Part shown: piece after piece, positions 4,392 to 61,334 of the stretch
Position numbering within the stretch: the first letter of the stretch is position 1
Layout: each line of letters opens with the position of its first letter
Origin: Macrostomum lignano
Taxonomy: Eukaryota
Assembly (NCBI GenBank): GCA_002269645.1
Contig: NIVC01000327.1
Coordinates: 186,001-250,000, forward strand
Reading direction: 5' to 3'
DNA: 64,000 nucleotides
Notes under the pieces: model-generated
What the model was told of the DNA's origin: nothing
What the model saw: only the letters and a program-made list of their open reading frames with translations
The model's database searches: none
Made by a program: the position numbers and the translations under genes

Positions 4392-4699
4392 CGCTTCGCT
4401 CGCTCTTTCTCGCTATCTACTATCAATAGCCAGGACCTGCACCGGAGCGGTTACGAAAATTAGATTTCTAGGTAGTTGCACGTACTCTTTTGCACTACTT
4501 GAGTAGTCTGATTTTCGTTCGGCATGGATAGGTTCCAGCAGGTACTTCCTCTGGATAAAAGCGCTTACCGCGCCCATTGGCTTTCCAGCTGCCTTAATCG
4601 TTTCCGGTGATCTTGTGTGCGTGCTTTCAGCTTGATTGGCTGCGGCAAGCAAGCTCGAAAGAGCTCGCTTCGCTCGCTTCGCTCGCTCTTTCTCGCTAT

Positions 4700-14370: not shown

Positions 14371-15458
14371 GATAGGTCAGTCTATCAAGCCAGTGTATTG
14401 TGTCATCTATCAATCAATTAAATCATTAAATCATTAAATTCCCGAACGTCTATTTTGTGCCCAATTTCTTGGCATCCTGTCGATTCTCACGAAAGCCTAA
14501 AAGCAAAAAATAACCCTCAGTTTGTGTCTCATGCAAGCAAGCTTGTGCTCAAAGTCAGCACCAACCAGCAGTCCCCAGCCAGATATGGTCTACCGCACAG
14601 ACCAGAGCATTTTGAATTAACGAATGAATGAAAACTGTCAGCCCTTACCCTTAAGTTTCTTATTTTTATGGCGACATAGGACGGCTATATGGAAGTGAGA
14701 ATTTTTATTGCAAGAGTAGCAACTGAGAGAGAGAGAGGCAGGAGAAAGGGAAAGGGCAGGGTGTGGCCTGAGTTCCGCGCAGCCGGGGTGACTCATTGCT
14801 GCACAACACACGCACAGTTAGTTGCTGTTGCTATAGGCAGGCCCGAGCTAAGAGAGCGGCCTACGGCCTAATTTCTGTGCATTATAGAGAGGCCCGAAAA
14901 AGTTGAATGCATTTAACAATGCTCCGTGCTCAGATGCATACAGGGAAGCAGAATCCAAGCAGGTCCTGTGGCGGTTGGTTGAAGAACAAGTCTCTATACT
15001 TCTAACTGCATGTACGCACGCTGCGGCATGGACAGTCCTGCCCAGGCATTGCCGACCTCCTCTACCTTTTAAAGCTACTCTCGACTCTCTTCTCTCCCTC
15101 TCCTTTCTCTTATGAAGTCCTTGCCAAGCAGTGTATATTATTAGGCACACACAGAGCTTACCTATTAGAGACTTTATTGACTGTACTTAAGGCCATCCCA
15201 TGCTGCCAAAGCCCCTGCCAATCAGCATGTAAGAGACGGACAGGACAGACAATAACTGGCACAGGAAAGGAAGGGCAGAGCGCGGAGACGCAAAGCATAC
15301 AATATAGTTAAAGATCCTATTGTCAATCGCTCTCGCCGTTTCGCCGTCCGGTCAAAAAAAACCCCGCAGACACACAAAAACTCACTTCGTTATTGCACTA
15401 TAATTCCAGTGTCAGAAACGCAAATAAATGATCGGCAGCTAACTGATCTCAATTGACG

Positions 15459-16004
15459 ATGATGCAACCAATGATGTCGCCTCCGAGTGCAGCTGGTCAG
15501 GCGTGTCCCAGGATCAAATGCGTGGTTGTCGGAGACGGCGGCGCCGGCAAGACCTGCCTGCTGTCAACTTACTCCAGAGGAGTGTTTCCCACCGACTACG
15601 TCCCCACAGTGTTTGATAACTACGACACAGTGGCTAGAGTTGATGGAGTTCCTGTGCAGCTGGGACTCTGGGACACGGCCGGCCAGGAGGACTATGACAA
15701 GCTGAGGCCGCTGAGCTATCCGCAGACAGACGTGTTCATCGTCTGTTTCAGCATCGGCAACAGGACCTCATTCAGCAATGTGTCAGACAAATGGCAACCG
15801 GAGTTGCAGAGCCACTCGCCAGGGACTCCGGTTCTGCTGGTTGGTACAAAGTGCGATCTAAGAGACGATCCCGACTTTGCCAATCACCTGCGACTGCACA
15901 ACCAGCGGGCGGTCACCAAGCAGGAGGCCAATGCCGTGGCCACCTCTATTGGAGCAATAAAGTACACCGAGTGCTCAGCTCTGAGAGGGGTCAACATCGG
16001 CCAG
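15459..16004 (+). CDS. RAC: Rac-like Rho-family small GTPase, exon 1 (182 codons)
   Basis: [15 protein letters not shown]-loop, YVPTVFDNY switch [40 protein letters not shown]. First ATG at 15459 follows an in-frame stop; donor CAG|GTGAGA at 16005. Confidence 0.95.
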
Positions 16005-16044
16005 GTGAGAGACGTCGGACCGAGGTTGAGATGAAGAGCATCTT

Positions 16045-27719: not shown

Positions 27720-29980
27720 TTTTTATGTTCCAACCCAGGACTTCAACGTGAGAACTTGGGCACCAGGTGGACGCTTCACTACACATTGGCGGACAAACGA
27801 GGTCGTGGAGGATTTGGAGTGCTGATCGGACCAAGGCTGCAGCAGAGCTGTCGCTGCAACTCCCTGTCCCCTTGGCTGCTTCGGGTTGACGTCTGGCTTC
27901 ACGGCCGGAATGCTTGCCTGTTCTGCAACCGGCCCAGCGCGGGCAGCCAGTCTGGCAGGACGACCCCAAGATTTGGCAAGCGAAGGAGGAGGTGGAGAGG
28001 CTCTGTCTGAGCAGACAGCCAACCCGCGAAGCAGAGAATGTACTGGCGGCTATCTATCTCAACATACATGCGCAACCTCCAAAATTCGGTCGGCCATGCG
28101 ACTTAGTTTTAACAAAAATGCGAAGTAGTTTTTGGCCAAAAATGCGACTTGCATGTAAAAAAAACCGTAAAACAAAATTAACGCAAGTTTGGGTAAACGG
28201 CAGGAGTAACTATGACTCTCTTTTTAAGCCAAAATGCCTCGTCAGCTACTTAGTACTACTACTTGGGTGTTTTAGGGTGGGAATTTTTGCGACTTTCTTG
28301 GTTGGTCGCCAAATCGGTCAGTCGGATCGGCCAACTGTTGCGCATGTATGTATCTCAAGCGCCAGCAGGCGGTCAGCCGGAACGGCCGACTGTTGCGCAT
28401 GTATGTATCTCAAGCGCCAGCAGGCCGCTGTTGACGACGCTATTCAGGCTGTCTCTGCTGCTGGGCCCGATGCCAGAGGGCGCGTGGCCTGGTCTGCCAT
28501 CAATGCTCTGACGGGACGAAAACGGCGCTTTGCGCTAAACCTGGCAGGCGACACTGCGGATGAGCGCAGAAATGAGCTGCGTGAGTTTTTCACCGCCATT
28601 GTCAACGCGCCGCCACCCCTGCTGCCAGATAACCTGACGCTGTCGCCGGAGACGCCGTTGCTGGCAGAGGAGAGTTTCAGTGTAGCCCCAGTCAGCACAG
28701 CCGACGTTGTGAAGCTCGCCCAGCTGTCACTGGGCGGCAAGGCGCTGGGTCCGGACAAGGTGCCCATCGAAGCATTGAAGCGCCCAGAGCAGAACGGCTT
28801 CCGACCCCATTGCAGCACAGTGACGCAGATCCTGGCTCTTCTCCGAGTCATCGAGGAGGCGCGGACTCGCCAGTCGATCCTGATTGTCATCTTTGTTGAT
28901 TTCAAGAAGGCGTTTGACTCGGTTGTCAGGGCTGCGCTCCCAATTGTGCTCCGTGCGTACAACGTGCCAGAGGCTGAGCAGCTGGTTTCCGCCATCATAG
29001 CGATGTACTGCGACACGAAAGCTGCTGTGACAACGCCGGACGGCCTATCAGATTTCTTCGAGACCTCCTCGGGGGTTCTTTAAGGAGATACGCTAGCGCC
29101 GTTCTTGTTCATGCTGGTGCTTAACTGGGTGCTGCGGACTGCACTTCCCTCCAACGACGATGACTTCCTGCTGCGGCGACGCGTGGGTCGACATCAACCG
29201 CAGAGGCGGCTCAGCGTGCTTGGTTACACCGACGATCTCGCCCTGCTGTCCTCTACCGTTGAGGGCGCCCAGCGACAGCTTGATCGACTGGTTGCTGTTG
29301 CGGCGAGTGTTGGCCTGATGATCAACGCACAGAAGACCGTCGTGCTGTGTGTGTCAGACGACATTGAGGCTGCTATCCTATGCCGAGGCGCTGACGGACA
29401 GGCAACGGAACCTTTTTGCGATGTCAGCATTTCTTCTACCTCGGTGGTCTGGTCCCTTACGTACGCGAGGATCTGCGTCGTCGCCGCGGGCTTGCCTGGG
29501 CTGCCTTCCGCTCTGTGAGGGCAGTCCTGCTGTCTGAGGCCCTTCCGGACCACCAGAGGGCGGCATTGTTCCAGGCGGTAGTCGAAATTGTTCTGCTTTA
29601 CAACCCCGAGACCTGGGCGCTGACAGACTTTTTCAAACATCAAGATCGGCGACGAGCGAGTCACCAATGTGGCACTCTATCGCCGCGCCGGCCTGGCCCG
29701 TCCAAGTGACCTGCTGCACCGTTGGCGACTTCAGCTGGCAGGTCATTTCATCCGCGCCGAGTCGTACTGCCCACAGCTGGTGCAGGAGGTGCTGCTGCTC
29801 ATGCTGCAGGCACCCTACCAGCGAGGACAGGCACGCACTCGGCGTTTCGTCGACTGCCTGCTGGCTAATGCCAGCGCCCCGGACTCTGCCAGCAAAGCAG
29901 CCTATGTTTGCACTTTGGCCTTGAGACGCACCCTGTGACACTAGAGACTATCCAGTGTACTTTGTTGTTGTTGTTTTTTG
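27720..29980 (+). pseudogene. Decayed non-LTR retrotransposon (RTE-like): APE endonuclease remnant plus reverse transcriptase
   Basis: FNVRT and GRGGFGVLI (APE-like); QNGFRP...FVDFKKAFDSV, GVL*GDTLAPFLF with a premature TAA at 29081-29083, YTDDLALL, LLYNPETWALT. Frameshifts and an apparent internal deletion; (TTG)n tail near 29961-29980; possible degenerate TSD TTGTGACAA at 27702 and 29981. Confidence 0.9.
28063..28350 (+). mobile_element. 288-bp MITE, TIR CATACATGCGCAAC, 8-bp TSD TATCTCAA, inserted in the LINE
   Basis: TSD at 28055-28062 and 28351-28358; removing the insert and its duplicated end restores LINE AAIY-LKRQQAAVDD. An 8-bp TSD points to the hAT or P superfamily. Confidence 0.92.
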
Positions 29981-31402
29981 TTGTGACAAAAAAATATCCT
30001 TTTTGAATTGCATAATGAACCAGACCCTTTTTAGCAGATAATTTCTTTGATTTTTTTATTGCAAGCTTAAACAACCTCAAAAGCTTGAAATTTATGCTTA
30101 AAAAACTTTTTTCAACTCTTTTCATCCTTTTTCTACTTTACAATAACTTTTCTGTGTGATTCTATAAAGTGCATGCTAGGTATGCATGCACACAATTTTC
30201 TTAGGAGTGATGCAGGCCAACTGTGTATGCCTACTTTTGGTGTGCAAAAAACAATAATTACTGCCTTAAATAAATCAAATGATGGTTAAATACTATGGCA
30301 AAATCCAAAAAGTTGGGATAAAATGGTAAAACAAATCTGTGGACATTTGATTGAAGGTAATGTATCTAAAAAGCCTTTTAAAAGACAGATAAGTCTTTTA
30401 AAATAGTTACAGATAAACACTATTATTTTCATGCTTTACATTGTTAAATAAAGTTGACCAATTTACAATTTTTTGTTTCACTTTTTTTCATTATTAAACA
30501 ATTAATTTTAAGACTTGTAGACCTTAGAGAAGGCTAATTTTTTCACTACTTACAAAACAGAGAGTATGTGTCTTACTTTTCATTTTATTCAAAAAGATGA
30601 AGGATTTCTAAGAATTTCTAAGTTTTTCTAAAACCACATAAACTTGCAAAAATTCATACTAATTTTAAGTGCAAAGTTTGCTAGCAAATATCTTTCTCTA
30701 AAAGTAAATATACTATTAATTCATTGTTGCAGAATGATCTTCAAGTTGTTTTAAGTTAATTTATGTCACAGGGGTTTTCCTCTGTCTTTATGAACAATCC
30801 CTCCGCTGGCACCAAAGTTGTGACAGGGCTTTTTCTTTCTTCTTAATAATATCCCACCACTGATACCAAGTTGTTGCTGGTGTTGGTTCTGTCCTCCAAC
30901 TATCCCACTAATTGCCACGAAGTTGTTACAGGTTTATATTTTTTTCTATTAAATTCTATTGTTGACACCAAATCTTGCCTTAATTCTTAACTGTTTCTTA
31001 GAACTTCATTCAAATAGTTCTGGGTAGCCTTCTTAGTAGTGTTTCTGGTAGCATTCTGGTAGCGTTTCTGGTAGCATTCTAGTAGCTTATGGCCTGAGGG
31101 TCTAGTACTGGTATATGTATTTCCTCTCTCCAGTCTGGGCGTTACTGAGATTAGAGGGTCACAGCGATTACTCTTAGTACTACCCTTTGCATACATGCGC
31201 AACTGCTGGCCGACCTGGCCGATTCGGCCACCGTAAATCGTGGCTGACCAGGGGTAAGTCGCAAAATTGAGTCAACCAAAAACAGAAAAACACAAGAACC
31301 AAGAAAGGCAAGAGGAAAGCGAAAGAAAGAGCAGTTCAGGGAAAATAATGAAGCAAAAGAAAAACAATTCGCAAAAGAAGCAAACTAAGTTGTAAAAATA
31401 AT

Positions 31403-32470
31403 CAGGTAAGTCGCAAAAAGGATCAGGTAAGTCGCAAAAAGGATCAGGTAAGTCGCAACAGGAATCAGGTAAGTCGCAACAGGAATCAGGTAAGTCGCAA
31501 AAGGGTTAGGTAAGTCGCAAAAAGGATTAGTTAAGTCCCAAAAAGGATTAGGTAAGTCGCAAAAAGGATCAGGTAAGTCGCAAAAAGGATTAGGTAAGTC
31601 GCAAAAAGGATTAGGTAAGTCGCAAAAAGAATCAGGTAAGTCGCAAAAGGATCAGGTAAGTCGCAAAAGGATCAGCTAAGTCGCAAAAGGGTTAGGTAAG
31701 TCGCAAAAGGGTTAGGTAAGTCGCAAAAGGGTTAGGTAAGTCGCAAAAGGGTTAGGTAAGTCGCAAAAGGATCAGCTAAGTCGCAAAAGGATTAGGTAAG
31801 TCGCAAAAAGGATTAGGTAAGTCGCAAAAAGGATTAGGTAAGTCACAAAGGGTTAGGTAAGTCGCAAAAGGATTAAGTAAGTCGCAAAAAGGATTAGGTA
31901 AGTCGCAAAAGGGATTAGGTAAGTCGCAAAAAGGATTAGGTAAGTCACAAAGGGTTAGGTAAGTCGCAAAAGGTTAGGTAAGTCGCAAAAAGGATTAAGT
32001 AAGTCGCAAAAAGGATTAGGTAAGACGCAAAAAGGATTAGCTAAGTCACAAAGGGTTAGGTAAGTCGCAAAAAGGATTAGCTAAGTCACAAAGGGTTAGG
32101 TAAGTCGCAAAAAGGATTAGCTAAGTCACAAAGGGTTAGGTAAGTCGCAAAAAGGATTAGGTAAGTCGCAAAAGGGTTAGGTAAGTCGCAAAAGGATTAG
32201 GTAAGTCGCAAAAAGGATTAAGTAAGTCGCAAAAAGGATTAGGTAAGTCACAAAAGGATTAGGTAAGTCACAAAGGGTTAGGTAAGTCGCAAAGGGTTAG
32301 GTAAGTCGCAAAAGGATTAAGTAAGTCGCAAAAAGGATTAAGTAAGTCGCAAAAAGGATTAGGTAAGTCGCAAACGGGTTAGGTAAGTCGCAAAAGGATT
32401 AGGTAAGTCGCAAAAAGGATTAAGTAAGTCGCAAAAAGGATTAGGTAAGTCGCAAAAAGAAGCAACTAAG
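31403..32470. repeat. 20-21-bp minisatellite (AGGTAAGTCGCAAAAAGGATT) inside the 2.8-kb element
   Basis: About 50 tandem units. Confidence 0.96.
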
Positions 32471-32619
32471 TCGCAATAAGAGGGAAGTAAGTCACAATCA
32501 GAGGCAATCAGGGGGTAGTAGGTGCAAGTGTGGCAGGAGAGCAAAAACAGAATAGAAGCCTTCAACCACAGACAAGATCTTTGAAATCAGAAGCCCGCGT
32601 CATTTCTTTAACTCTGGAG

Positions 32620-32670
32620 CAGGGGTTGGCAAACTCCGGCTCGCGAAGCCCCTCTATCTGGCCCTCGCCC
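32620..32670 (+). mobile_element. Possible orphan hAT-like left terminus (CAGGGGTTGGCAAACTCCGGC)
   Basis: Resembles hAT/Charlie CAGGGG..CAAACT termini; no partner end found. Confidence 0.35.
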
Positions 32671-32714
32671 CTCGGGTTCTTTGAAACTTCCTAACTTCGA
32701 GTAGCAAGGTTGGT

Positions 32715-33395
32715 GTCTCTTCAACTCTCATCTCTCTCTTCTTCTCTACCTTGCCTCCCCTCTTCTCTCTCTCCCCCCTTTTCCCTCTTCTCTCTCCTCT
32801 CATTTTTACTCTCCTCTCTTCTCCCCCTTTCTCTCTACCCTTTCTCCTCAATGCCCTCTTCTCTCCTCTTATCTTCAGCAAAAATATGTGCATATTTTCT
32901 TACTTCAAAGTAGAGGGAATAGAAGATTAGAGATAAGCAAACAGAGGAGAGGCGAGCGATGCGATGGGAGAAAAGATAGAAGAGGAGAGAAAAGCTGAGG
33001 GAGGAAAAAGAGATGAGAGAGAAGAGGAGATGAGAGAAAAGAGGAAAGAAAAGATGATGGATAAGATCAGAAGAGAGGAAAGAGGAAAGAGGAGAGAGTA
33101 GATGAGAGAAGAGAGGATAAAGAGGAGATGAGAGGAGAGTGAAGAGAGGAGAGATGAGAGAGTAGAAAAGAGAGGAGAGATAATGAGAGAGTAGAGTGGA
33201 GAGAGACGAGAGGGAAGATAAGATGAGAGAGTAGAGTGGAATGGAGAGAGACGAGAGGAGAGATAAGAATGTAGAGAGGAGACAGAAGAGATAGGAGAGG
33301 AGAGGAAAGAGAGGAGAGAGGAGAGGAAAGAGAGAAGGGATAAGGGATGAGAGAGAAAAGAAAAAGAGGATGAGAAGATTGAGGAATGGAGAGAA
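32715..33395. repeat. CT-rich tract followed by a GA-rich tract
   Basis: Polypyrimidine 32715-32870 and polypurine 32930-33395. Confidence 0.8.
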
Positions 33396-34282
33396 TTTGC
33401 AAAGGCCTCAAATCTTAGTTTAACATGCATTACTCCCATCTTTGCCTTTTTCCTAACTGTTAACAAGTTTTTGTTTGAGCATGACTTCAAATTTAGAATC
33501 TATGCAAAAATAGTTCCAGGAATTAGAATTCAGTGGTTTAAAAATCTGTGGGTTTTCACAGCTTGTATCTCTACTGGATTCGTATTCTGCATCTGATGAG
33601 CCATCTGAATCAGGGCTCTCATCTTCCATGCCAAATCGTCTAGCAAATCGTTCTTGAGCTATAGGTAGGGCCTAACACTGTATTCACTTCACTTACTTCT
33701 GGACATTCATGAATCATGACTTTTGTAGTATGCTCACTACACTGTACTGACAATTTACTAATTGCTTCATGCCGCCACTAGATGACATACTGATTAGCTG
33801 TTATAAAAACGCGGAATCTGCACGCAGCACTAATTAGCTGGCGAGGCATTTAGCTTTAAAAAATATAGTCATAGTTACTCCTGCCGTTTACCTAAAGTTT
33901 TTGCTTGGCTCTTTCATAGGTAAGTCGCATTTTTTATCGAAAACTAAGTCGCACGGCCAGCGTAATTTCAGAAGTTGCGCATGTATGACCCTTTGCATGA
34001 ATCCCAAGTGCAACCTTTAACCTTCTTCACAATACTCTTAGAAATGAACAATGGTCTGAGAAAGATTTATTGAACACATTTTGAGCTTATAGCTAGTGAA
34101 CAAGTTGTCTCTTCTTCCTCTCAGCCTGCTCCTATTTATACTATTCGAATGTGTATATTTTTAACAAATATCAAATATTTTATATTTATTTTCAACTATA
34201 TATAGAATATTTTGTAGAGTAAAACAAATTATTAGCGCAGATTCAAACTGTTATATTCCTAGAGACTATTAACCACATCTAC

Positions 34283-43919: not shown

Positions 43920-44277
43920 TTCTGTCGCGATTCTCCTTGCACTTTGGCGTCCGATTTTACGCATCGGACCCGTCGCGACTGCTAGAAGAGTACACCCGCT
44001 ACCAGCTGTTCCTGCAGCTGAGACGCGACCTCACCTCCGGCAAGCTGGTCTGCTCACCCGAATGCGCCGCTCTGCTAGTTAGCTTGGCTCTGCAATCCGA
44101 TTTAGGCGACTGCCAGCTCCCGTTAGCTGCTCAGCTAGACGAGTTTCAGGCTAAGCAGAAGCGAGCCAAACCTCCGTGCGACTGTTTTAAAGCCTGTCAG
44201 CGATTGAAGCTGGCCTGCGTGCCTGGCCAGACTGCAGCTCTGGAGGCCAGGGCGGCTGAGCTGCATGCCAGTCACAG
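43920..44277 (+). CDS. FERM gene exon 4
   Basis: FGVRFYASDPSRLLEEYTRYQLFLQLRRDLTSGKLVC matches PTPN4/Ptpmeg FRVKFYVSDPSRLQEEFTRYQ; phase 1 in, phase 2 out. Confidence 0.93.
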
Positions 44278-44292
44278 GTGTGTGTTTTTTCT

Positions 44293-44293
44293 G

Positions 44294-44368
<75 letters not shown>

Positions 44369-44390
44369 GTCTGTCTGTCTGTCTGTCAGT
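44293..44390. repeat. (CTGT)n microsatellite in FERM intron 4
   Basis: Tetranucleotide run. Confidence 0.95.
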
Positions 44391-44630
44391 CAGTCTGTGT
44401 GCCTGTCTCGGTTTGTCTTGTCTCTTACAGTCTGCCTGACTCCGTGTTTTTCTCTGTCTCTCACTCTCTCTACCACTTGGCCTTTCATTTTAGTTACGTC
44501 CGCCCGTTTTTGTGCCTGTCTTATGTGTTTAGCTTTCGTCTTTCCGACTGTAAAATTCTATTAGTTACTACTTGATTGCAGCAGTAGACTAGTGCGTATT
44601 TTTTAGTTTAAAAAATCCCCTAAATTTCAG

Positions 44631-44718
44631 AGGCTTATCGGCTGGCTGCGCAGAGCTGAGCTTCCTACTAGCGGCTAGGCAGCTGGATCACTACGGCTGC
44701 ATCATGTTCCCCGTTGTG
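44631..44718 (+). CDS. FERM gene exon 5
   Basis: RGLSAGCAELSFLLAARQLDHYG matches FERM GLspaeAE..yL..Ar.Le.YG; phase 2 in, phase 0 out. Confidence 0.9.
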
Positions 44719-44944
44719 GTGAGTACTGGCCTTAATGCATCCATTTGCAGATTTTTCTTTATTTCTACATTATTTAATAACTTGCTAGCTAATGGGAAAA
44801 ATCTGTTCCTGACTTTAAATGTCAATCAAAATACTTTCGTTCATAAATATTAACATCTGGTTGAATTCTATTTCTGTCGGCTGAATGCAATCTAAAATTC
44901 ATAAACCCCATACTCTGCGTAGAATTTCACCTTCGTTCTCACTA

Positions 44945-45365
44945 AATAGACAACCCATAGATACTCAGCAGCACCCAACAACCCAGTTCCAAACCTTATT
45001 GATAACACACTCATTCACTCAGCAGCACCCACCACCCCAGTTCCACAGCCATAGATAACACGCTCGCTCACTCAGCAGCACCCACCACCCCAGTTCCACA
45101 GCCATAGATAACACGCTCGCTCACTCAGCAGCACCCACCACCCCAGTTCCACAGCCATAGATAACATGCTCGCTCACTCAGCAGCACCCACCACCCCAGT
45201 TCCACAGCCATAGATAACACGCTCGCTCACTCAGCAGCACCCACCACCCCAGTTCCACAGCCATAGACAACACGCTCGCTCACTCAGCAGCACCCACCAC
45301 CCCAGTTCCACAGCCATAGATAACACGCTCGCTCACTCAGTAGCACCTACCTCCACAGTCATAGA
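44945..45365. repeat. 53-bp minisatellite in FERM intron 5
   Basis: ACTCAGCAGCACCCACCACCCCAGTTCCACAGCCATAGATAACACGCTCGCTC, about 7-8 copies. Confidence 0.95.
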
Positions 45366-45385
45366 TAACAATTCCACACCCACAG

Positions 45386-46090
45386 GAGAGCAATAAACAG
45401 TCAGCCCAATTAGGCGTCAACTGCTCTGGCTTGTCAGTATTCCGATCGGGCTCGCGTCAGAAGTTGTACGGCTGGGCTAATATAGCAGAGATCAGCTTTC
45501 GCAGGCGAAAATTCAGCGTACACATGTGCGATGCAAACAACAGTGTCGTAGAATTTCAATTAGCCAGTTCTCGTCTGTGCAAACTGGCCTGGCGAGAATG
45601 TGCTCAGCAGCATGCGTTCTTTAGGCTGCCCCACAACACGCATCATGGCCAACAGCAGTCTTTGTTTTCTCTGGGAGTGACTCAAGAATCCGCTTCTCTG
45701 TCTCCGCATTCTTCAATTGCCGCTGTGGTGGCAGCCAGACTGAATGCAGCTTTAGGCATTGTGGCTCAGCAAGCTTCGGCTATGGTTAGTCAAAGACGGC
45801 GCCGGGTAGTGCAGGAGCAGCAGCAGCAGCAGCAGCAACAGCAGAAGAAGCATCGCCAGCACCAGCATCAGCCGTTGCGTCGGGCGTTTCAACGATCGCC
45901 CTGGCGTCAGGCGCTCGAACCTGCAACTCCCGCTGCCGCCGCCGCCGCCGCGGCTTCCATTTCTGCGCGCGATCGACGGCGATTTCAGCTGACATTTGCG
46001 ACTACAACTGCGGCTGCCGCAACTGCGACTGCTACGGCTGCTGCCGCTGCTGCCAGCGGCGAGAGTCCAAGGTCGGTGGTCGAGAGACAG
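45386..46090 (+). CDS. FERM gene exon 6 (F3/PH-like lobe, then polyQ and polyAla low-complexity region)
   Basis: LGVNCSGLSVF...WANIAEISFRRRKF...CKLAWRECAQQHAFFRL is the FERM C-lobe signature; donor CAG|GTGAGG. Confidence 0.9.
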
Positions 46091-46114
46091 GTGAGGCTTC
46101 GGGGTTGGCGTGAA

Positions 46115-46250
46115 CTGCAGCTTGGAGAGTGAAATTGTGGGGTTTGGTGTGAACTGAAGCTTGGAGAGTGACATTGTGGGGTTTGGTGTGAACTGAAGCT
46201 TGGAGAGTGACATTGTGGGGTTTGGTGTGAACTGCTTGGAGAGTGACATT
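46115..46250. repeat. 39-bp minisatellite (GTGAACTGAAGCTTGGAGAGTGACATTGTGGGGTTTGGT)
   Basis: About 3.5 copies just after the exon 6 donor. Confidence 0.9.
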
Positions 46251-47818: not shown

Positions 47819-48429
47819 TGATCCACCGGTCTTGTACCGTCTAGATACCCATATAAAATAGTAACACACCGGCTATACATAATTATCCGAGCACTGTTAT
47901 ACATCGCTATGTTATTTCTCAAAGCATCTCAGCTGCTTCAGAATGCAATCAATTATTCAGCTGAGTAGGAATCGCTCTTTCCCTCTCCTGATGTATTCGA
48001 AGTGAAGCTGTCAGCTTGAATATGCTTGTATAGCATGCAGATTATGTATGCATATATAAGCATATTAGTATTATTGCATTATCAAAACGCGTTCGGCTAT
48101 CCGCAAATGTACTTTTAGCGCTATCAATCCAACCAGCATCCCATTTCTGGGTGTAAACAGAATTTCTCTTTCCCCCCGTAGTTTGATCCTCCCGCCTCTC
48201 TATTCTTCTCTAGATGGGGCACTTTATTAAATGGGAGAGCAACTGAGGTGCCTCTAATCTAAGGGTAAAAGAGGAGAGATTTCAATAGCGCACTGTACTA
48301 TTCACAAGCCCCACTCTGGCCCAAGTAGCGATTCGTAACTTCATCTAGACTGGCTTGGCTCGGGACCCTGTGCACGCCCACGCATTCCCCTTTTTTCACA
48401 TACTCACACCCTCTCTCCCCATCTCTCCC

Positions 48430-51400
48430 CTATTCCCTATTTTCTCTCTCCACTCTTCTCTCTCCTCTCCTCTTTCTCCTCTTCTCTCCTCTCCTCTCCT
48501 CTCCTCTCCTCTCCTCTCCTCTCGTCTCCTCTCCTCTCTTCTCTCCTCTCCTCTCCTCCCCTCTCCTCTCCTCTTTCTCATCTCCTCTCCTCTCCTCTCC
48601 TCTCCTCTTTCTCATCTCCTCTCCTCTCCTCTCCTCTCCTCTCCTCTTTCTCATCTCCTCTCCTCTCCTCTCCTCTCCTCTCCTCTCTTCTACTCTCCTC
48701 TTCTCTCCTCTCCTCTCCTCTCCTCTCCTCTCCTCTCCTCTCCTCTCTTCTACTCTCCTCTTCTCTCCTCTCCTCTCCTCTCTTCTCCTCTTCTCTCGTC
48801 TTCTCTCCTCTCCTCTCCTCTCCTTTCCTCTCCTCTCCTCTCCTCTCCTCTTCTCTCCTCTCCTCTCCTCTCCTCTTCTCTCGTCTCCTCTCCTCTCTTC
48901 TCTCCTCTCCTCTCCTCCCCTCTCCTCTCCTCTTTCTCATCTCCTCTCCTCTCCTCTCCTCTCCTCTCCTCTTTCTCATCTCCTCTCCTCTCCTCTCCTC
49001 TCCTCTCCTCTCTTCTACTCTCCTCTTCTCTCCTCTCCTCTCCTCTCCTCTCCTCTCCTCTCCTCTCTTCTACTCTCCTCTTCTCTCCTCTCCTCTCCTC
49101 TCTTCTCCTCTTCTCTCGTCTTCTCTCCTCTCCTCTCCTCTCCTTTCCTCTCCTCTCCTCTCCTCTCCTCTTCTCTCCTCTCCTCTCCTCTCCTCTCCTC
49201 TCCTCTTTCTCCTCTCCTCTCCTCTCCTCTCCTCTCCTCTCCTCTCCTCTTCTCTCGTCTCCTCTCCTCTCTTCTCTCCTCTCCTCTCCTCCCCTCTCCT
49301 CTCCTCTTTCTCATCTCCTCTCCTCTCCTCTCCTCTCCTCTCCTCTTTCTCATCTCCTCTCCTCTCCTCTCCTCTCCTCTCCTCTTTCTCATCTCCTCTC
49401 CTCTCCTCTCCTCTCCTCTCCTCTCTTCTACTCTCCTCTTCTCTCCTCTCCTCTCCTCTCCTCTCCTCTCCTCTCCTCTCTTCTACTCTCCTCTTCTCTC
49501 CTCTCCTCTCCTCTCTTCTCCTCTTCTCTCGTCTTCTCTCCTCTCCTCTCCTCTCCTTTCCTCTCCTCTCCTCTCCTCTCCTCTTCTCTCCTCTCCTCTC
49601 CTTTCCTCTCCTCTCCTCTTCTCTCCTCTCCTCTCCTATCCTCTCCTCTTCTCTCCTCTCCTCTCCTCTCCTCTCCTCTCTTCTCTTCTCCTCTCCTCTC
49701 TTTTCCTCTCCTCTCCTCTCCTCTCCTCTCCTCTTCTCTTCTCTCCTCTCCTCTCCTCTCCTCTCCTCTCCTCTCCTCTCTTCTACTCTCCTCTTCTCTC
49801 CTCTCCTCTCCTCTCTTCTCCTCTCCTCTCCTCTCTTCTCCTCTCCTCTCTTTTCCTCTCCTCTCCTCTCCTCTCCTCTTCTCTCCTCTCCTCTCCTCTC
49901 CTCTCCTCTCCTCTCCTCTCTTCTACTCTCCTCTTCTCTCCTCTCCTCTCCTCTCTTCTCCTCTTCTCTCGTCTCCTCTCCTCTCCTCTCCTCTTCTCTT
50001 CTCTCGTCTCCTCTCCTCTCCTCTCCTCTCCTCTCCTCTCCTCTCCTCTCTTCTACTCTCCTCTTCTCTCCTCTCCTCTCCTCTCTTCTCCTCTTCTCTC
50101 GTCTCCTCTCCTCTCCTCTCCTCTCGTCTCCTCTCCTCTCCTCTCCTCTTCTCTCGTCTCCTCTCGTCTCCTTTCCTCTCGTCTCCTTTCCTCTCCTCTC
50201 CTCTCCTCTCCTCTCCTCTCCTCTCCTCTCTTCTACTCTCCTCTTCTCTCCTCTCCTCTCTTCTCCTCTTCTCTCGTCTCCTCTCCTCTCCTCTCCTCTC
50301 CTTTCCTCTCCTCTCCTCTCCTCTCCTCTTCTCTCCTCTCCTCTCCTCTCCTCTCCTCTCCTCTCCTCTCCTCTCCTCTCCTCTTCTCTTCTCTCGTCTC
50401 CTCTCGTCTCCTTTCCTCTCCTCTCCTCTTCTCTCCTCTCCTCTCCTCTCCTCTCCTCTTCTCTTCTCTCGTCTCCTCTCGTCTCCTTTCCTCTCGTCTC
50501 CTCTCCTCTCCTCTCCTCTCTTCTACTCTCCTCTTCTCTCCTCTCCTCTCCTCTCCTCTCCTCTCCTCTCCTCTCCTCTCTTCTACTCTCCTCTTCTCTC
50601 CTCTCCTCTCCTCTCTTCTCCTCTTCTCTCGTCTTCTCTCCTCTCCTCTCCTCTCCTCTCCTCTCCTCTCCTCTCCTCTCCTCTCCTCTCCTCTCCTCTC
50701 TTCTCCTCTCCTCTCTTTTCCTCTCCTCTCCTCTCCTCTCCTCTCTTTTCCTCTCCTCTCCTCTCCTCTCCTCTCCTCTCCTCTCTTCTACTCTCCTCTT
50801 CTCTCCTCTCCTCTCCTCTCTTCTCCTCTTCTCTCGTCTTCTCTCCTCTCCTCTCCTCTCCTCTCCTTTCCTCTCCTCTCCTCTCCTCTCCTCTCCTCTC
50901 CTCTCTTCTCCTCTCCTCTCTTTTCCTCTCCTCTCCTCTCCTCTCCTCTCCTCTCCTCTCCTCTCCTCTCCTCTCCTCTCTTCTCCTCTCCTCTCCTCTC
51001 CTCTTCTCTCGTCTCCTCTCCTCTCCTTTCCTCTCCTCTCCTCTCCTCTCTTCTCCTCTCTTCTCCTCTCCTCTCTTCTCCTCTTCTCTCGTCTCCTCTC
51101 CTTTCCTCTCCTCTCCTCTCCTCTCCTCTTCTCTCCTCTCCTCTCCTCTCCTCTTCTCTCGTCTCCTCTCCTCTCCTCTCCTTTCCTCTCCTCTCCTCTC
51201 CTCTTCTCTCCTCTCCTCTCCTCTCCTCTCCTCTCCTCTCTTCTACTCTCCTCTTCTCTCCTCTCCTCTCCTCTTCTCTCGTCTCCTCTCCTCTCCTTTC
51301 CTCTCCTCTTCTCTCGTCTCCTCTCCTTTCCTCTCCTCTCCTCTCCTCTCCTCTCCTCTTCTCTCCTCCTCTCCTCTCCTCTCCTCCTCCTCTCCTCTCT

Positions 51401-54400
51401 TCTACTCTCCTCTTCTCTCCTCTCCTCTCCTCTCCTCTCTCTCTTCTCTCGTCTCCTCTCCTCTCCTCTCCTCTTCTCTTCTCTCGTCTCCTCTCGTCTC
51501 CTTTCCTCTCCTCTCCTCTTCTCTCCTCTCCTCTCCTCTCCTCTCTTCTTCTCTTCTCTCGTCTCCTCTCGTCTCCTTTCTCTCTCGTCTCCTCTCCTCT
51601 CCTCTCCTCTCTTCTACTCTCCTCTCCTCTCCTCTCCTCTCCTCTCGTCTCCTTTCCTCTCTCTCCTCTCCTCTCTTCTACTCTCCTCTTCTCTCCTCTC
51701 CTCTCTTCTCCTCTTCTCTCGTCTCCTCTCCTCTCCTCTCCTCTCCTTTCCTCTCCTCTCCTCTCCTCTCCTCTCCTCTCCTCTCCTCTCCTCTCTTCTA
51801 CTCTCCTCTTCTCTCCTCTCCTCTCCTCTCCTCTCCTCTTCTCTCGTTTCCTCTCCTCTCCTCTCCTCTTCTCTTCTCTCGTCTCCTCTCGTCTCCTTTC
51901 CTCTCGTCTCCTCTCCTCTCCTCTCCTCTCTTCTACTCCTCCTCTTCTCTCCTCTCCTCTCCTCTCCTCTCCTCTCCTCTCCTCTCCTCTCTTCTACTCT
52001 CCTCTTCTCTCCTCTCCTCTCCTCTCTTCTCCTCTTCTCTCGTCTTCTCTCCTCTCCTCTCCTCTCCTCTCCTTTCCTCTCCTCTCCTCTCCTCTCCTCT
52101 CCTCTCCTCTCTTCTCCTCTCCTCCTTTTTCCTCTCCTCTCCTCTCCTCTCCTCTCTTTTCCTCTCCTCTCCTCTCCTCTCCTCTCCTCTCCTCTCTCTT
52201 CTACTCTCCTCTTCTCTCCTCTCCTCTCCTCTCTTCTCCTCTCTCTCGTCTTCTCTCGCTCTCCTCTCCTCTCCTCTCCTTTCCTCTCCTCTCCTCTCCT
52301 CTCCTCTCCTTCTCTCTTCTCCTCTCCTCTCTTTTCCTCTCCTCTCCTCTCCTCTCCTCTCCTCTCCTCTCCTCTCCTCTCCTCTCCTCTCTCTCCTCTC
52401 CTCTCCTCTCCTCTTCCTCTCGTCTCCTCTCTCTCCTTTCCTCTCCTCTCTCTCCTCTCTTCTCCTCTCTTCTCCTCTCCTCTCTTCTCCTCTTCCTCGT
52501 CTCCTCTCCTTTCCTCTCCTCTCCTCTCCTCTCCTCTTCTCTCCTCTCCTCTCCTCTCCTCTTCTCTCGTCTCCTCTCCTCTCCTCTCCTTTCCTCTCCT
52601 CTCCTCTCCTCTTCTCCCTCTCCTCTCCTCTCCTCTCCTCTCCTCTCTTCTACTCTCCTCTTCTCTCCTCTCCTCTCCTCTTCTCTCGTCTCCTCTCCTC
52701 TCCTTTCCTCTCCTCTTCTCTCGTCTCCTCTCCTTTCCTCTCCTCTCCTCTCCTCTCCTCTCCTCTTCTCTCCTCTCCTCTCCTCTCCTCTCCTCTCCTC
52801 TCCTCTCTTCTACTCTCCTCTTCTCTCCTCTCCTCTCCTCTCCTCTCCTCTTCTCTCGTCTCCTCTCCTCTCCTCTCCTCTTCTCTTCTCTCGTCTCCTC
52901 TCGTCTCCTTTCCTCTCCTCTCCTCTTCTCTCCTCTCCTCTCCTCTCCTCTCTTCTTCTCTTCTCTCGTCTCCTCTCGTCTCCTTTCCTCTCGTCTCCTC
53001 TCCTCTCCTCTCCTCTCTTCTACTCTCCTCTCCTCTCCTCTCCTCTCCTCTCGTCTCCTTTCCTCTCCTCTCCTCTCCTCTCTTCTACTCTCCTCTTCTC
53101 TCCTCTCCTCTCTTCTCCTCTTCTCTCGTCTCCTCTCCTCTCCTCTCCTCTCCTTTCCTCTCCTCTCCTCTCCTCTCCTCTCCTCTCCTCTCCTCTCCTC
53201 TCTTCTACTCTCCTCTTCTCTCCTCTCCTCTCCTCTCCTCTCCTCTTCTCTCGTTTCCTCTCCTCTCCTCTCCTCTTCTCTTCTCTCGTCTCCTCTCGTC
53301 TCCTTTCCTCTCCTCTCCTCTCTCTCTCTCTCCTCTCCTCTCCTCTCTCTTCTCTTCTCTCGTCTCCTCTCGTCTCCTTTCCTCTCGTCTCCTCTCCTCT
53401 CCTCTCCTCTCTTCTACTCTCCTCTCCTCTCCTCCCTCTCCTCTCGTCTCCTTTCCTCTCCTCTCCTCTCCTCTCTTCTACTCTCCTCTTCTCTCCTCTC
53501 CTCTCTTCTCCACTTCTCTCGTCTCCTCTCCTCTCCTCTCCTCTCCTTTCCTCTCCTCTCCTCTCTCTCCTCTCCTCTTCTCTCCTCTCCTCTCCTCTCC
53601 TCTCCTCTCCTCTCCTCCTCCTCTTCTCTCGTCTCCTCTCGTCTCCTTTCCTCTCCTCTCCTCTTCTCTCCTCTCCTCTCCTCTCCTCTCCTCTTCTCTC
53701 TCTCGTCTCCTCTCGTCTCCTTTCCTCTCGTCTCCTCTCCTCTCCTCTCCTCTCTTCTACTCTCCTCTTCTCTCCTCTCCTCTCCTCTCCTCTCCTCTCC
53801 TCTCCTCTCTTCTACTCTCCTCTTCTCTCCTCTCCTCTCCTCTCTTCTCCTCTTCTCTCGTCTTCTCTCCTCTCCTCTCCTCTCCTTTCCTCTCCTCTCC
53901 TCTCCTCTCCTCTTCTCTCCTCTCCTCTCCTTTCCTCTCCTCTCCTCTTCTCTCCTCTCCTCTCCTATCCTCTCCTCTTCTCTCCTCTCCTCTCCTCTCC
54001 TCTCCTCTCTTCTCTTCTCCTCTCCTCTCTTTTCCTCTCCTCTCCTCTCCTCTCCTCTCCTCTTCTCTTCTCTCCTCTCCTCTCCTCTCCTCTCCTCTCC
54101 TCTCCTCTCTTCTACTCTCCTCTTCTCTCCTCTCCTCTCCTCTCTTCTACTCTCCTCTCCTCTCTTCTCCTCTCCTCTCTTTTCCTCTCCTCTCCTCTCC
54201 TCTCCTCTTCTCTCTCTCCTCTCCTCTCCTCTCCTCTCCTCTCCTCTCTTCTACTCTCCTCTTCTCTCCTCTCCTCTCCTCTCTTCTCCTCTTTTCTCGT
54301 CTCCTCTCCTCTCCTCTCCTCTTCTCTTCTCTCGTCTCCTCTCCTCTCCTCTCCTCTCCTCTCCTCTCCTCTCTTCTACTCTCCTCTTCTCTCCTCTCCT

Positions 54401-55620
54401 CTCCTCTCTTCTCCTCTTCTCTCGTCTCCTCTCCTCTCCTCTCCTCTCGTCTCCTCTCCTCTCCTCTCCTCTTCTCTCGTCTCCTCTCGTCTCCTTTCCT
54501 CTCGTCTCCTTTCCTCTCCTCTCCTCTCCTCTCCTCTCCTCTCCTCTCCTCTCTTCTACTCTCCTCTTCTCTCCTCTCCTCTCTTCTCCTCTTCTCTCGT
54601 CTCCTCTCCTCTCCTCTCCTCTCCTTTCCTCTCCTCTCCTCTCCTCTCCTCTTCTCTCCTCTCCTCTCCTCTCCTCTCCTCTCCTCTCCTCTCCTCTTCT
54701 CTTCTCTCCTCTCCTCTCGTCTCCTTTCCTCTCCTCTCCTCTTCTCTCCTCTCCTCTCCTCTCCTCTCCTCTTCTCTTCTCTCGTCCCCTCTCGTCTCCT
54801 TTCCTCTCGTCTCCTCTCCTCTCCTCTCCTCTCTTCTACTCTCCTCTTCTCTCCTCTCCTCTCCTCTCCTCTCCTCTCCTCTCCTCTCTTCTACTCTCCT
54901 CTTCTCTCCTCTCCTCTCCTCTCTTCTCCTCTTCTCTCGTCTTCTCTCCTCTCCTCTCCTCTCCTTTCCTCTCCTCTCCTCTCCTCTCCTCTCCTCTCCT
55001 CTCCTCTCTTCTCCTCTCCTCTCTTTTCCTCTCCTCTCCTCTCCTCTCCTCTCCTCTTCTCTCCTCTCCTCTCCTCTCCTCTCCTCTCCTCTCCTCTCTT
55101 CTACTCTCCTCTTCTCTCCTCTCCTCTCCTCTCTTCTCCTCTCCTCTCCTCTCTTCTCCTCTCCTCTCTTTTCCTCTCCTCTCCTCTCCTCTCCTCTCCT
55201 CTTCTCTCCTCTCCTCTCCTCTCCTCTCCTCTCCTCTCTTCTACTCTCCTCTTCTCTCCTCTCCTCTCCTCTCTTCTCCTCTTCTCTCGTCTCCTCTCCT
55301 CTCCTCTCCTCTTCTCTTCTCTCGTCTCCTCTCCTCTCCTCTCCTCTTCTCTCCTCTCCTCTCCTCTCCTCTCCTCTCTTCTACTCTCCTCTTCTCTCCT
55401 CTCCTCTCCTCTCTTCTCCTCTTCTCTCGTCTCCTCTCCTCTCCTCTCCTCTCCTCTCCTCTCCTCTCCTCTCCTCTTCTCTCGTCTCCTCTCGTCTCCT
55501 TTCCTCTCGTCTCCTTTCCTCTCCTCTCCTCTCCTCTCCTCTTCTCTTCTCTCGTCTCCTCTCGTCTCCTTTCCTCTCCTCTCCTCTCGTCTTGTCTCCT
55601 CTGCTGTCTCCTTTTGTCTC
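48430..55620. repeat. (CTCCT)n satellite, ~7.2 kb, with higher-order variant blocks
   Basis: Pentamer run punctuated by CTCGT, CTACT and CTTT variants. Confidence 0.97.
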
Positions 55621-56454
55621 TTCCCTCCTCTCCTCCCCTCCCTTTCCTATTTCCATTAAAGCTCATTTCTCCCAATCTTCTTTCCGTGCGTCATTCTCGT
55701 AATTTCCCTTCACGCGCTTTATGCCCCGCGTTCTTGCAATCTTTTCAAAACCCAAAGCAATCTGTTTGTATCGTGACACCTTTTTATCCTTCCGAGCAGA
55801 TTCAAAAGAAGCGCCCAAGCCAGAATTGGTGGCAATTTCGATTTGATCAAGTTTCATGCTGAAACAGACAACTGAAAGCGCCTAAAAAGAATTGGAATTT
55901 TCTCAGCATCACTAGCACAAGACTAATTGGACTTAAAATGAAGCCATTTTCTCTAGGACTCTGGCTGTATAGCATCCGTTGCGTTTGATGCCTTTGAAGT
56001 CTTTTTCGAAGCCATCCTGCCCAAGGCTGCACGTCAGTCCGTATTAGTACTTGAACTTGGTCTAGTGCGCACTTGTAGTGTAGCAGTACAGTGCGCTAAG
56101 TTTCCTTGTTCCAGTTGCAACAGGGGGGCCTACACACTTTCTACTCGTATTATTACTGTCGATACTAAATGCCATTTTAGAATTGCTTAAAATGCTGTTG
56201 TGTACATCTCTCTCAGGCCGTCACACACACGGAGACAGACACAAGTATTCCCTCAGCTCCCTCTCTCCTCCCCCCATGCTGCCCAATCGGAATCCCCTCT
56301 TTTGCTTCATCAATTTTCCATCCTGACCTCCTCTCTCCTACCCCTGCCCTCCCACCCTTGCCTTAGTGTATAAACTTCAACATTTTCGTTCAATAATTTT
56401 TTCTACCTTATCTTATCTATATTTTTGAAGAAAAAAATTGCAATTAATCATAAG

Positions 56455-61291: not shown

Positions 61292-61334
<43 letters not shown>

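What the first reader, a model, noticed from the sequence alone, without database searches (positions are those of the whole stretch)
28180..28255. DNA transposon carries the 28S rRNA H69-H71 segment with the R2/I-PpoI cleavage core destroyed (copy 1)
Seen: GGGTAAACGGCAGGAGTAACTATGACTCTC-TTTTTAAGCC-AAAATGCCTCGTCAGCTACTTAGT. The conserved eukaryotic 28S sequence, recalled from memory, is GGGTAAACGGCGGGAGTAACTATGACTCTC-TTAAGGTAGCC-AAATGCCTCGTCATCTAATTAGT: 29/30 identity on the left, about 21/23 on the right, with damage concentrated in TTAAGGTAG. Established: this is the I-PpoI site (CTCTCTTAAGGTAGC), the R2 retrotransposon insertion site, and next to the Pokey TTAA site. Inference: a TIR family captured rDNA at a cut site, and surviving copies are those immune to or scarred by an rDNA-specific endonuclease. 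The segment might act as a decoy, homology handle or source of rRNA-like small RNA. I know 28S-derived SINEs, but not this arrangement in an 8-bp-TSD TIR element.
Basis: partly seen in the sequence, partly recalled or inferred. Interest (0 to 1): 0.85.

Follow-up and report, generated by a model that had tools for sequence, protein, structure and literature searches.

The report
28S rRNA fragment inside flatworm transposon
Two copies of a cut-and-paste transposon in a Macrostomum flatworm genome carry a 65-80-base piece of the 28S ribosomal RNA gene, picked up once and now decaying; this is an ordinary capture of host DNA, and nothing shows that the damaged endonuclease site is more than an inherited accident.

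Summary
Window 28191-28254 matches the eukaryotic 28S H69-H71 region at 29/30 bases on the left and 21/23 on the right. TTAAGGTAGCC is replaced by TTTTTAAGCCA. Genuine rDNA contigs hit 28175-28254 at E about 1e-16.

The segment lies in the middle of a 288-bp non-autonomous TIR element (28063-28350). That element has perfect 14-bp TIRs and an 8-bp TSD, and it interrupts a LINE reading frame. A second, 2.8-kb copy (31190-33987, minus strand) has the same TIRs, its own 8-bp TSD and the same 28S piece in the same place. The host is Macrostomum lignano or a close relative.

Both copies share the core lesion (+TTT, -GGT) and a T-to-G change. Capture and core loss therefore happened once, before the copies diverged. 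Private changes do not cluster significantly at the core (6 of 9, P=0.052, window chosen post hoc). The 28S part is no better conserved between copies than the arms.

The best reading is captured "filler" host DNA in a Ds-like or Pack-type element, carried passively. The endonuclease-scar, immunity and decoy ideas are neither needed nor tested. Only two copies could be obtained, so a family-wide profile is still missing. Interest is low to moderate.

The parts
28063..28350 (+). Copy 1: 288-bp non-autonomous TIR element (MITE-like), inserted in a LINE reading frame
   Evidence: Perfect 14-bp TIRs at 28063-28076 and 28337-28350, flanked by the 8-bp TSD TATCTCAA. Removing the element, one TSD and the 55-bp duplication restores the LINE ORF ...ENVLAAIYL|KRQQAAVDDAIQ....
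28055..28062 (.). Left target-site duplication of copy 1 (TATCTCAA); the right copy is at 28351-28358
   Evidence: Read directly from the sequence.
28191..28254 (+). 28S rRNA H69-H71-derived segment of copy 1. This is the secure core; the blastn match begins at 28175.
   Evidence: cmscan RF02543 model positions 2214-2310, 16.6 bits. 29/30 and 21/23 identity. blastn E about 1e-16 to genuine rDNA contigs.
28221..28231 (+). Lesion replacing the I-PpoI/R2 core: TTTTTAAGCCA where 28S has TTAAGGTAGCC
   Evidence: Three-way alignment: +TTT and -GGT are shared with copy 2; -A and +A are private to copy 1.
28315..28425 (+). 55-bp x2 tandem duplication spanning the right end of copy 1 plus 19 bp of flank. 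It arose after insertion and accounts for the extra TIR at 28392-28405.
   Evidence: TRF period 55, 2.0 copies, 94% matches; third TIR match.
31190..33987 (-). Copy 2: 2,798-bp member or sub-family with the same 14-bp TIRs and the 8-bp TSD CAAAGGGT (33988-33995 and 31182-31189)
   Evidence: About 74% identity to copy 1 over 140 bp including the 28S piece, plus the right end.
33829..33893 (-). 28S-derived segment of copy 2, in the same position and orientation relative to the left TIR. It may continue to about 33811 (GTGCTGCGTGCAGATTCC).
   Evidence: cmscan RF02543 14.7 bits, model 2215-2313. 26/30 and 21/23 identity, middle TTTTTTAAAGCT. The downstream extension is not significant on its own.
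31386..32480 (-). 21-bp x54 tandem array inside copy 2, built on the family's subterminal motif TGCGACTT
   Evidence: TRF. All 50 exact TGCGACTT in the window lie in the two elements, in element orientation, against a chance expectation of about 1.

Best explanation
A non-autonomous cut-and-paste DNA transposon family with 14-bp TIRs, an 8-bp TSD and the TGCGACTT subterminal motif is present in a Macrostomum flatworm genome. The superfamily is probably hAT but is unproven.

The family acquired, once, a short piece of the host's multicopy 28S rDNA as internal 'filler'. About 65 nt are secure, and the original piece was possibly 80-120 nt. [quoted passage not shown]

The piece has since been carried passively between the two arms that the transposase needs. 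The master copy had already lost the TTAAGGTAG core through two small indels in a T/A-rich stretch (+TTT, -GGT) before the lineages of copy 1 and copy 2 separated. Both copies have since decayed at about the same rate in the 28S part as in the arms.

Shown: the homology, the element structure, bona fide transposition of both copies, and the shared ancestry of the lesion. Inferred: the capture mechanism, neutrality, and the superfamily.
For: - Homology to 28S is secure.
- Both copies have perfect TIRs and perfect but different 8-bp TSDs. Copy 1 splits an otherwise continuous LINE ORF, so these are transposed units rather than rDNA pseudogenes.
- The 28S piece sits centrally, between arms that carry the family motif TGCGACTT; all 50 occurrences in the window fall inside the two elements. 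This is the layout of internally deleted elements with filler DNA.
- Four changes relative to 28S are shared by both copies: G-to-A, +TTT, -GGT and T-to-G. This indicates a single capture and a single ancestral core lesion.
- Identity between the copies in ungapped columns is 57/63 in the 28S part, 68/77 in the left arm and 49/60 in the right arm. The 28S part shows no special constraint.
- Private changes do not cluster significantly at the core (P=0.052, post hoc).
- No other rDNA-like sequence occurs in the window.
- Precedent: maize Ds-like hAT elements carry filler DNA, sometimes captured from genes, attributed to replication errors during repair of excision breaks (PMC3260210).
Against: - Only two copies could be examined, so neutrality rests on small counts.
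- The largest lesion does fall on the 9-nt I-PpoI/R2 core, and 6 of 9 private events also lie in or next to it. This is borderline and could reflect slippage in the T/A run.
- No autonomous partner or transposase was found, so the superfamily and the gap-repair route are inferred.
Confidence: 0.72

Rival explanations
1. Endonuclease scar or immunity. Either the captured 28S piece was cut by an rDNA-specific nuclease (R2, an I-PpoI-like enzyme, or Pokey-type piggyBac) and repaired with errors, or copies with an intact site were eliminated by R2 insertion or cleavage. In either case only core-dead elements spread.
For: - The shared lesion (+TTT, -GGT) lies within about 3 nt of the R2 nick and the I-PpoI cut in CTCTCTTAAGG^TAGCC, while 29/30 and 21/23 of the flanking bases survive.
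- Metagenomic 28S genes are often interrupted just after CTCTTAAGG, which confirms the site as an insertion hot spot.
- R2 is known from Platyhelminthes (PMC5035012).
Against: - The lesion is one ancestral event shared by both copies. A single event landing in a 9-11-nt target within a 65-120-nt fragment has roughly a 10% chance expectation, and it was noticed after the fact.
- By event count, 2 of 4 shared events fall in the core window (P=0.43).
- No R2-type endonuclease or homing endonuclease was recognised in the window. The host LINE shows only an RT domain.
- The lesion sits in a T/A run that is prone to slippage.
Confidence: 0.08
2. Functional module. The 28S-like segment is kept because it does something for the element or the host, for example as a decoy for rDNA-binding proteins, a source of rRNA-like small RNA or piRNA, a homology handle to rDNA, or a transposase or host-factor binding site.
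For: - The segment is retained in two diverged copies (about 74% identity overall) with a 26-nt stretch identical in both.
- The copy 1 transcript would fold with the TIRs paired, z = -2.4.
Against: - Substitution-level identity between copies is no higher in the 28S part than in the left arm (57/63 against 68/77).
- The rRNA helices are partly broken, and cmscan scores are far below the gathering threshold.
- No expression or small-RNA data are available here.
Confidence: 0.05
3. Same passive passenger, different capture route. Two elements inserted close together in an rDNA unit moved as a composite (macrotransposition) carrying the intervening 28S, and the inner ends were later deleted. This replaces filler synthesis during gap repair.
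For: - Macrotransposition by paired hAT ends is documented for Ac/Ds (PMC3260210).
- rDNA is a frequent landing site for mobile elements.
Against: - No remnants of inner TIRs flank the 28S piece in either copy.
- No family member was seen in rDNA.
- The fragment boundaries are fuzzy and differ between copies because of later indels.
Confidence: 0.12
4. Chance resemblance, a dispersed rDNA pseudogene, or an assembly chimera that is unrelated to the transposon.
For: None beyond the sub-threshold Rfam scores.
Against: - blastn E about 1e-16.
- The same piece occurs at the same position in two elements at different loci, each with its own TSD.
Confidence: 0.01

Closest known systems
Ds-like (Ds-l4/Ds2) hAT elements of maize with filler DNA or captured gene fragments (PMC3260210)
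   Same: Short TIRs, 8-bp TSD and subterminal repeats, with an internal stretch of unrelated host DNA carried between the arms. Non-autonomous, and often inserted in other repeats.
   Different: Here the passenger is a piece of 28S rDNA and the host is a flatworm. The superfamily is not proven: the TIR begins CATAC rather than the hAT YARNG, and no transposase was found.
Pack-TYPE transposons (Pack-MULE, Pack-CACTA; PMC8903248 listed)
   Same: Non-autonomous TIR elements that capture and amplify host gene fragments.
   Different: Those are plant elements that mostly carry protein-coding exons. Here a 65-80-nt non-coding rRNA piece is carried, and only two copies were seen.
SINE28 (PMC4994717)
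   Same: A mobile element containing LSU rRNA-derived sequence.
   Different: SINE28 comes from the 3' end of 28S, is transcribed by Pol III and moves by retroposition. This element is a TIR/TSD DNA transposon carrying the H69-H71 region.
Fish R2 lineages with a 28S-derived sequence in the 3' UTR (PMC5035012)
   Same: A transposon that acquired a 28S fragment near the R2 site region.
   Different: There the fragment is linked to target choice of a non-LTR retrotransposon. A cut-and-paste element has no comparable role for it.
rDNA-site-specific elements: R2, the I-PpoI group I intron endonuclease, Pokey (established knowledge)
   Same: They act on the same approximately 15-nt stretch, CTCTCTTAAGGTAGC, that is altered in the captured piece.
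   Different: Those elements insert into 28S. Here a 28S piece sits inside a transposon, and the recognition core is absent.

Membership tests
Non-autonomous TIR DNA transposon with captured host DNA (Ds-like / Pack-type) | Terminal inverted repeats at both ends | tested here: met
   A 14/14 perfect TIR, CATACATGCGCAAC, in both copies.
Non-autonomous TIR DNA transposon with captured host DNA (Ds-like / Pack-type) | Target-site duplication of fixed length that differs between copies | tested here: met
   8-bp TSDs TATCTCAA (copy 1) and CAAAGGGT (copy 2). The empty site restores a LINE ORF.
Non-autonomous TIR DNA transposon with captured host DNA (Ds-like / Pack-type) | Internal segment homologous to a host gene, and no transposase ORF | tested here: met
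   28S homology. No Pfam or homologue support for any ORF in either copy.
hAT superfamily | 8-bp TSD | tested here: met
   The feature is not exclusive: P, Merlin, some Mutator, Zisupton and Novosib also give 8 bp (my own knowledge).
hAT superfamily | TIR terminus YARNG and TSD consensus nTnnnnAn | tested here: not met
   The TIR starts CATAC. The TSDs TATCTCAA and CAAAGGGT fit the consensus at most at one of the two positions. The consensus itself is from my own knowledge.
hAT superfamily | Autonomous partner encoding a transposase with BED finger and hAT dimerisation domain and the same TIRs | not testable with these tools
   None found among the window ORFs scanned with Pfam. The host genome is not searchable here.
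Eukaryotic LSU rRNA gene (Rfam RF02543) | Score at or above the gathering threshold (50 bits) | tested here: not met
   16.6 and 14.7 bits, and only model positions about 2214-2313 of 3401.
R2 / I-PpoI target site | Intact CTCTCTTAAGGTAGC core | tested here: not met
   Copy 1 reads CTCTCTTTTTAAGCC; copy 2 reads CTATATTTTTTAAAGC.
SINE28 / rRNA-derived SINE | [quoted passage not shown] | tested here: not met
   The segment is H69-H71, about two thirds of the way along the LSU model, and the element has TIRs and a fixed TSD.

The most novel reading that the evidence does not exclude
The family once carried a working mimic of the R2/I-PpoI target on dispersed chromosomal copies. Selection at the level of the transposon, through R2 insertion or cleavage of intact-core copies, left only core-dead lineages. 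If so, these elements would record a conflict between an rDNA-specific endonuclease and a DNA transposon, or would have served as extra-rDNA landing pads for R2.
Probability: 0.06. Interest if true: 0.65.

Novelty: new member of a known kind. Interest (0 to 1): 0.25.

Why it matters
As it stands, this is a clean annotated example of host-sequence capture by a DNA transposon in an animal. It has a practical consequence: rRNA-like hits in Macrostomum assemblies, RNA-seq or small-RNA data can come from this transposon family rather than from rDNA, and repeat libraries should flag the family.

It would matter more only if a genome-wide census showed repeated, independent destruction of the endonuclease core, or R2 insertions in family members. 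That result would reveal an interaction between an rDNA-specific retrotransposon or homing enzyme and an unrelated mobile element.

Tried and rejected
1. More copies through spurious ORFs. The fully open 95-aa frame across copy 1 and a 58-aa ORF in copy 2 (33453-33629, minus strand, which looked faintly like a transposase N-terminus) found no homologues and no Pfam family.
2. More copies by DNA scans. The 26-mer shared by both copies returned only genuine 28S genes and a few 28S fragments from metagenomes, none with the element's core. Element-specific patterns found nothing in GTDB genomes or IMG/VR. None of the searchable DNA collections is a eukaryotic genome collection.
3. Exact look-up of the window's Rho GTPase ORF, to fetch more of the host genome, found no record.
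4. Extending the homology. The upstream extension in copy 1 is marginal (4-8 of 500 shuffles with two 28S variants, not significant with the others). The upstream extension in copy 2 and both downstream extensions are not significant alone.
5. A strong hairpin or small-RNA precursor. There is only a modest fold (z = -2.4), driven by TIR pairing.
6. R2 identity of the LINE that hosts copy 1. Its RT is closer to the R2 RTs than to L1 among solved structures (1e-13 against 4e-4), but only an RT domain is detectable. The 3' region is short and looks like APE-type LINEs to me (inference). The clade was left unresolved.
7. Literature searches found no described DNA transposon carrying this 28S region. 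Absence from this library is not proof of novelty.

Full report
**What is there**

Window 28191-28254 reads GGGTAAACGGCAGGAGTAACTATGACTCTC-TTTTTAAGCCA-AAATGCCTCGTCAGCTACTTAGT. The Rfam eukaryotic LSU model (RF02543) aligns this stretch to its positions about 2214-2310. Its printed consensus is ...CGGGUAAACGGCGGGAGUAACUAUGACUCUCUUAAGGUAGCCAAAUGCCUCGUCAucUAAUUagUGAC.

- Identity is 29/30 on the left and 21/23 on the right. TTAAGGTAGCC is replaced by TTTTTAAGCCA.
- The Rfam score is only 16.6 bits (gathering 50), and the whole window has no gathering-level RNA family. This is a fragment, not a gene.
- The homology itself is not in doubt. The 26-mer GGTAAACGGCAGGAGTAACTATGACT occurs exactly in 42 metagenome contigs. 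Most of these are genuine 28S genes; a few (L025, L031, L034) are 28S fragments outside a normal rDNA context.
- blastn of those contigs against the window hits essentially only two places, 28175-28254 (E about 1e-16, 82% over 83 nt) and 33800-33900, plus one stray hit near 4650 that was not examined.
- Local-alignment scores exceed shuffles by more than 10 sd.
- By the usual helix numbering (my own knowledge), GGGAGUAACUAUGACUCUC is H69 and CGUCAUCUAAUUAGUGACG is H71.

**Context**

CATACATGCGCAAC occurs five times in the window, against a chance expectation of 0.03.

- Copy 1 is 28063-28350 (288 bp). It has perfect 14-bp TIRs and the 8-bp duplication TATCTCAA on both sides.
- Copy 1 interrupts a non-LTR retrotransposon reading frame. 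Removing the element, one TSD and a later 55-bp tandem duplication (28315-28425) restores ...ENVLAAIYL|KRQQAAVDDAIQ..., which leads into an RT domain.
- Copy 2 is 31190-33987 on the minus strand (2,798 bp). It has the same TIRs and a different 8-bp duplication, CAAAGGGT.
- Both copies are therefore bona fide transposed units.
- The 28S piece lies in the same orientation in both: 128 nt from the left end in copy 1 and 94 nt in copy 2.
- The arms carry a family-specific motif. All 50 exact TGCGACTT in the 64-kb window lie within the two elements, always in element orientation, against an expectation of about 1. A 21-bp x54 array inside copy 2 is an expansion of this motif.
- No ORF in either copy has Pfam or homologue support, so both copies are non-autonomous.
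- The host is Macrostomum lignano or a very close relative. A Rho-family GTPase ORF at 15453-16034 is 98% identical to a UniRef M. lignano protein.

**History of the segment**

A three-way comparison of the Rfam consensus, copy 1 and copy 2 gives four changes shared by both copies: G-to-A in GGCGGGAG, +TTT, -GGT, and T-to-G in CATCTA. Three events are private to copy 1 and six to copy 2.

- The 'destroyed core' is thus essentially two small indels that were already present in the common ancestor of the two copies. One capture and one core loss are enough to explain the data.
- The G-to-A change may not be damage. Many natural 28S genes carry that A, usually with the compensating C-to-U on the other side of the H69 stem, and some carry it without. 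The host 28S could not be retrieved.
- Of the nine private events, six lie in a 24-column window around the core (P=0.052). The window was chosen after seeing the data, and it consists largely of T and A runs where slippage is expected.
- By event count, 2 of 4 shared events lie in that window (P=0.43).
- Between the two copies, identity in ungapped columns is 57/63 in the 28S part, 68/77 in the left arm and 49/60 in the right arm. The 28S part is not specially conserved.
- The two halves of the 55-bp duplication next to copy 1 already differ at about 6% of positions. The insertion is therefore old, and part of copy 1's private change is post-insertion decay.

**Extent of the captured piece**

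About 65 nt are secure. blastn starts 16 nt further upstream in copy 1 (AAATTAACGCAAG against 28S AAATTCAAGCAAG). Copy 2 appears to continue downstream (GTGCTGCGTGCAGATTCC against GTGACGCGCATGAATGGATTAACGAGATTCC). Tested separately against shuffles, these extensions are marginal or not significant. The original fragment may have been 80-120 nt or more.

**Mechanism**

The layout is left arm, then unrelated host DNA, then right arm. This is the layout of internally deleted cut-and-paste elements with 'filler' DNA. Maize Ds-like elements carry such filler, sometimes from genes, and it has been attributed to replication errors during repair of excision breaks (PMC3260210).

rDNA is present in hundreds of copies, so it is a likely ectopic template. 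I therefore read the segment as a passive passenger captured once (inferred) and decaying neutrally; the small counts above are consistent with that. A composite or macrotransposition origin from elements resident in rDNA is a possible alternative route, but no inner TIR remnants support it.

The lesion does fall on the 9-11 nt cut by I-PpoI and nicked by R2. That site is a real insertion hot spot: several metagenomic 28S genes are interrupted just after CTCTTAAGG, and R2 is known in flatworms (PMC5035012).

Against the model:
- A single ancestral lesion landing there has roughly a 10% chance expectation, and it was noticed post hoc.
- The site is in the middle of the captured piece, not at its edge.
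- No R2-type or homing endonuclease was recognised in the window. The LINE that hosts copy 1 has an RT closest to R2 RTs among solved structures, but it shows only an RT domain and has a short 3' region. I left its clade open.
- The decoy, small-RNA and homology-handle ideas have no support. The copy 1 fold is only modestly better than shuffles and is driven by TIR pairing.

**Comparison with known systems**

It works like Ds-like or Pack-type elements that carry captured host DNA, and it meets their structural criteria.

- Membership of hAT is unproven. The 8-bp TSD fits, but the TIR terminus (CATAC) and the TSDs do not fit the usual hAT consensus, and no transposase is available.
- It is not SINE28, which derives from the 3' end of 28S and is a Pol III retroposon (PMC4994717).
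- It is not an R2 lineage with a 28S-derived 3' UTR.
- I found no description of a DNA transposon carrying this 28S region in the searchable literature. That is weak evidence of novelty.

**Limits**

No eukaryotic genome collection was searchable. Attempts to obtain more copies through spurious ORFs, metagenomes, GTDB genomes and IMG/VR failed. All inferences about family history rest on two copies.

**Verdict**

This is a new member of a known kind, of low to moderate interest. The decisive step is a genome-wide census of the family in Macrostomum assemblies, together with the host 28S and an R2 search.

Noticed in passing
window 28315-28425: A 55-bp unit made of the last 36 nt of copy 1 plus 19 nt of LINE flank is tandemly duplicated (94% identical). 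This produces a third, orphan TIR at 28392-28405. It shows that the insertion is old enough for the two halves to have diverged.
   Followed up: partly
window 31386-32480 (inside copy 2): A 21-bp x54 tandem array (unit TAAGTCGCAAAAAGGATCAGG) is built on the family's subterminal motif TGCGACTT. All 50 exact occurrences of that 8-mer in the window lie in the two elements. This looks like a transposase-binding-site repeat expanded into a minisatellite.
   Followed up: partly
window 48355-55659 and 59352-63187; also 32930-33400 inside copy 2: Very long, almost pure pyrimidine (CT-rich) low-complexity arrays have GC skew about -0.9 and give multi-kb stop-free 'ORFs' in several frames. The CT-rich block inside copy 2 is about 74% similar to them.
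   Followed up: no
window 15453-16034 and 43937-46132: An intron-free stretch encodes a Rho/Rac-type GTPase that is 98% identical to a Macrostomum lignano UniRef protein, which identifies the host. Exons of a FERM-domain gene (FERM_M, FERM_C) lie about 10 kb from copy 2.
   Followed up: partly
window 27735-30100: The degenerate non-LTR retrotransposon that hosts copy 1 has an RT whose best solved-structure matches are R2 proteins (E=1e-13) rather than LINE-1 (E=4e-4). No endonuclease domain was detected, and the clade is unresolved.
   Followed up: partly
L031 115-165 (soil metagenome contig Ga0173479_10047994): A 45-50-nt 28S H69-H70 fragment with a nearly intact R2/I-PpoI core (TTCTTAGGGTAGCC) sits outside any rDNA context. 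It is flanked on both sides by AGCCGGCCGGCC and by (TTAC)n and (GACC)n microsatellites. This is another organism with this same 28S piece dispersed.
   Followed up: no
L025 about 2000-2289; L001, L003, L005/L038, L011, L013, L016, L026/L041: L025 repeats a 28S fragment that ends at TTAAGGTA. The other contigs listed are metagenomic 28S genes interrupted within or just after the CTCT(C/T)TTAAGG stretch by unrelated sequence (in L013 the break comes earlier, directly after GACT). These look like R2-type insertions or introns; L026 and L041 have a short 5'-junction duplication.
   Followed up: no
L002, L004, L006-L008 and many others: Natural 28S genes with GGCAGGAG nearly always read CTCTTTTAAGG. 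This is a compensatory A-U for G-C exchange at the base of the H69 stem. A few (L009, L034, L036) have the A with the unchanged C.
   Followed up: partly
window 33453-33629 (-): A 58-aa ATG-initiated ORF (MEDESPDSDGSSDAEYESS...SWNYFCIDSKFEV...) lies inside copy 2, just downstream of the 28S piece. It has no homologue and no Pfam hit, so whether it is a remnant of a transposase N-terminus is unknown.
   Followed up: yes
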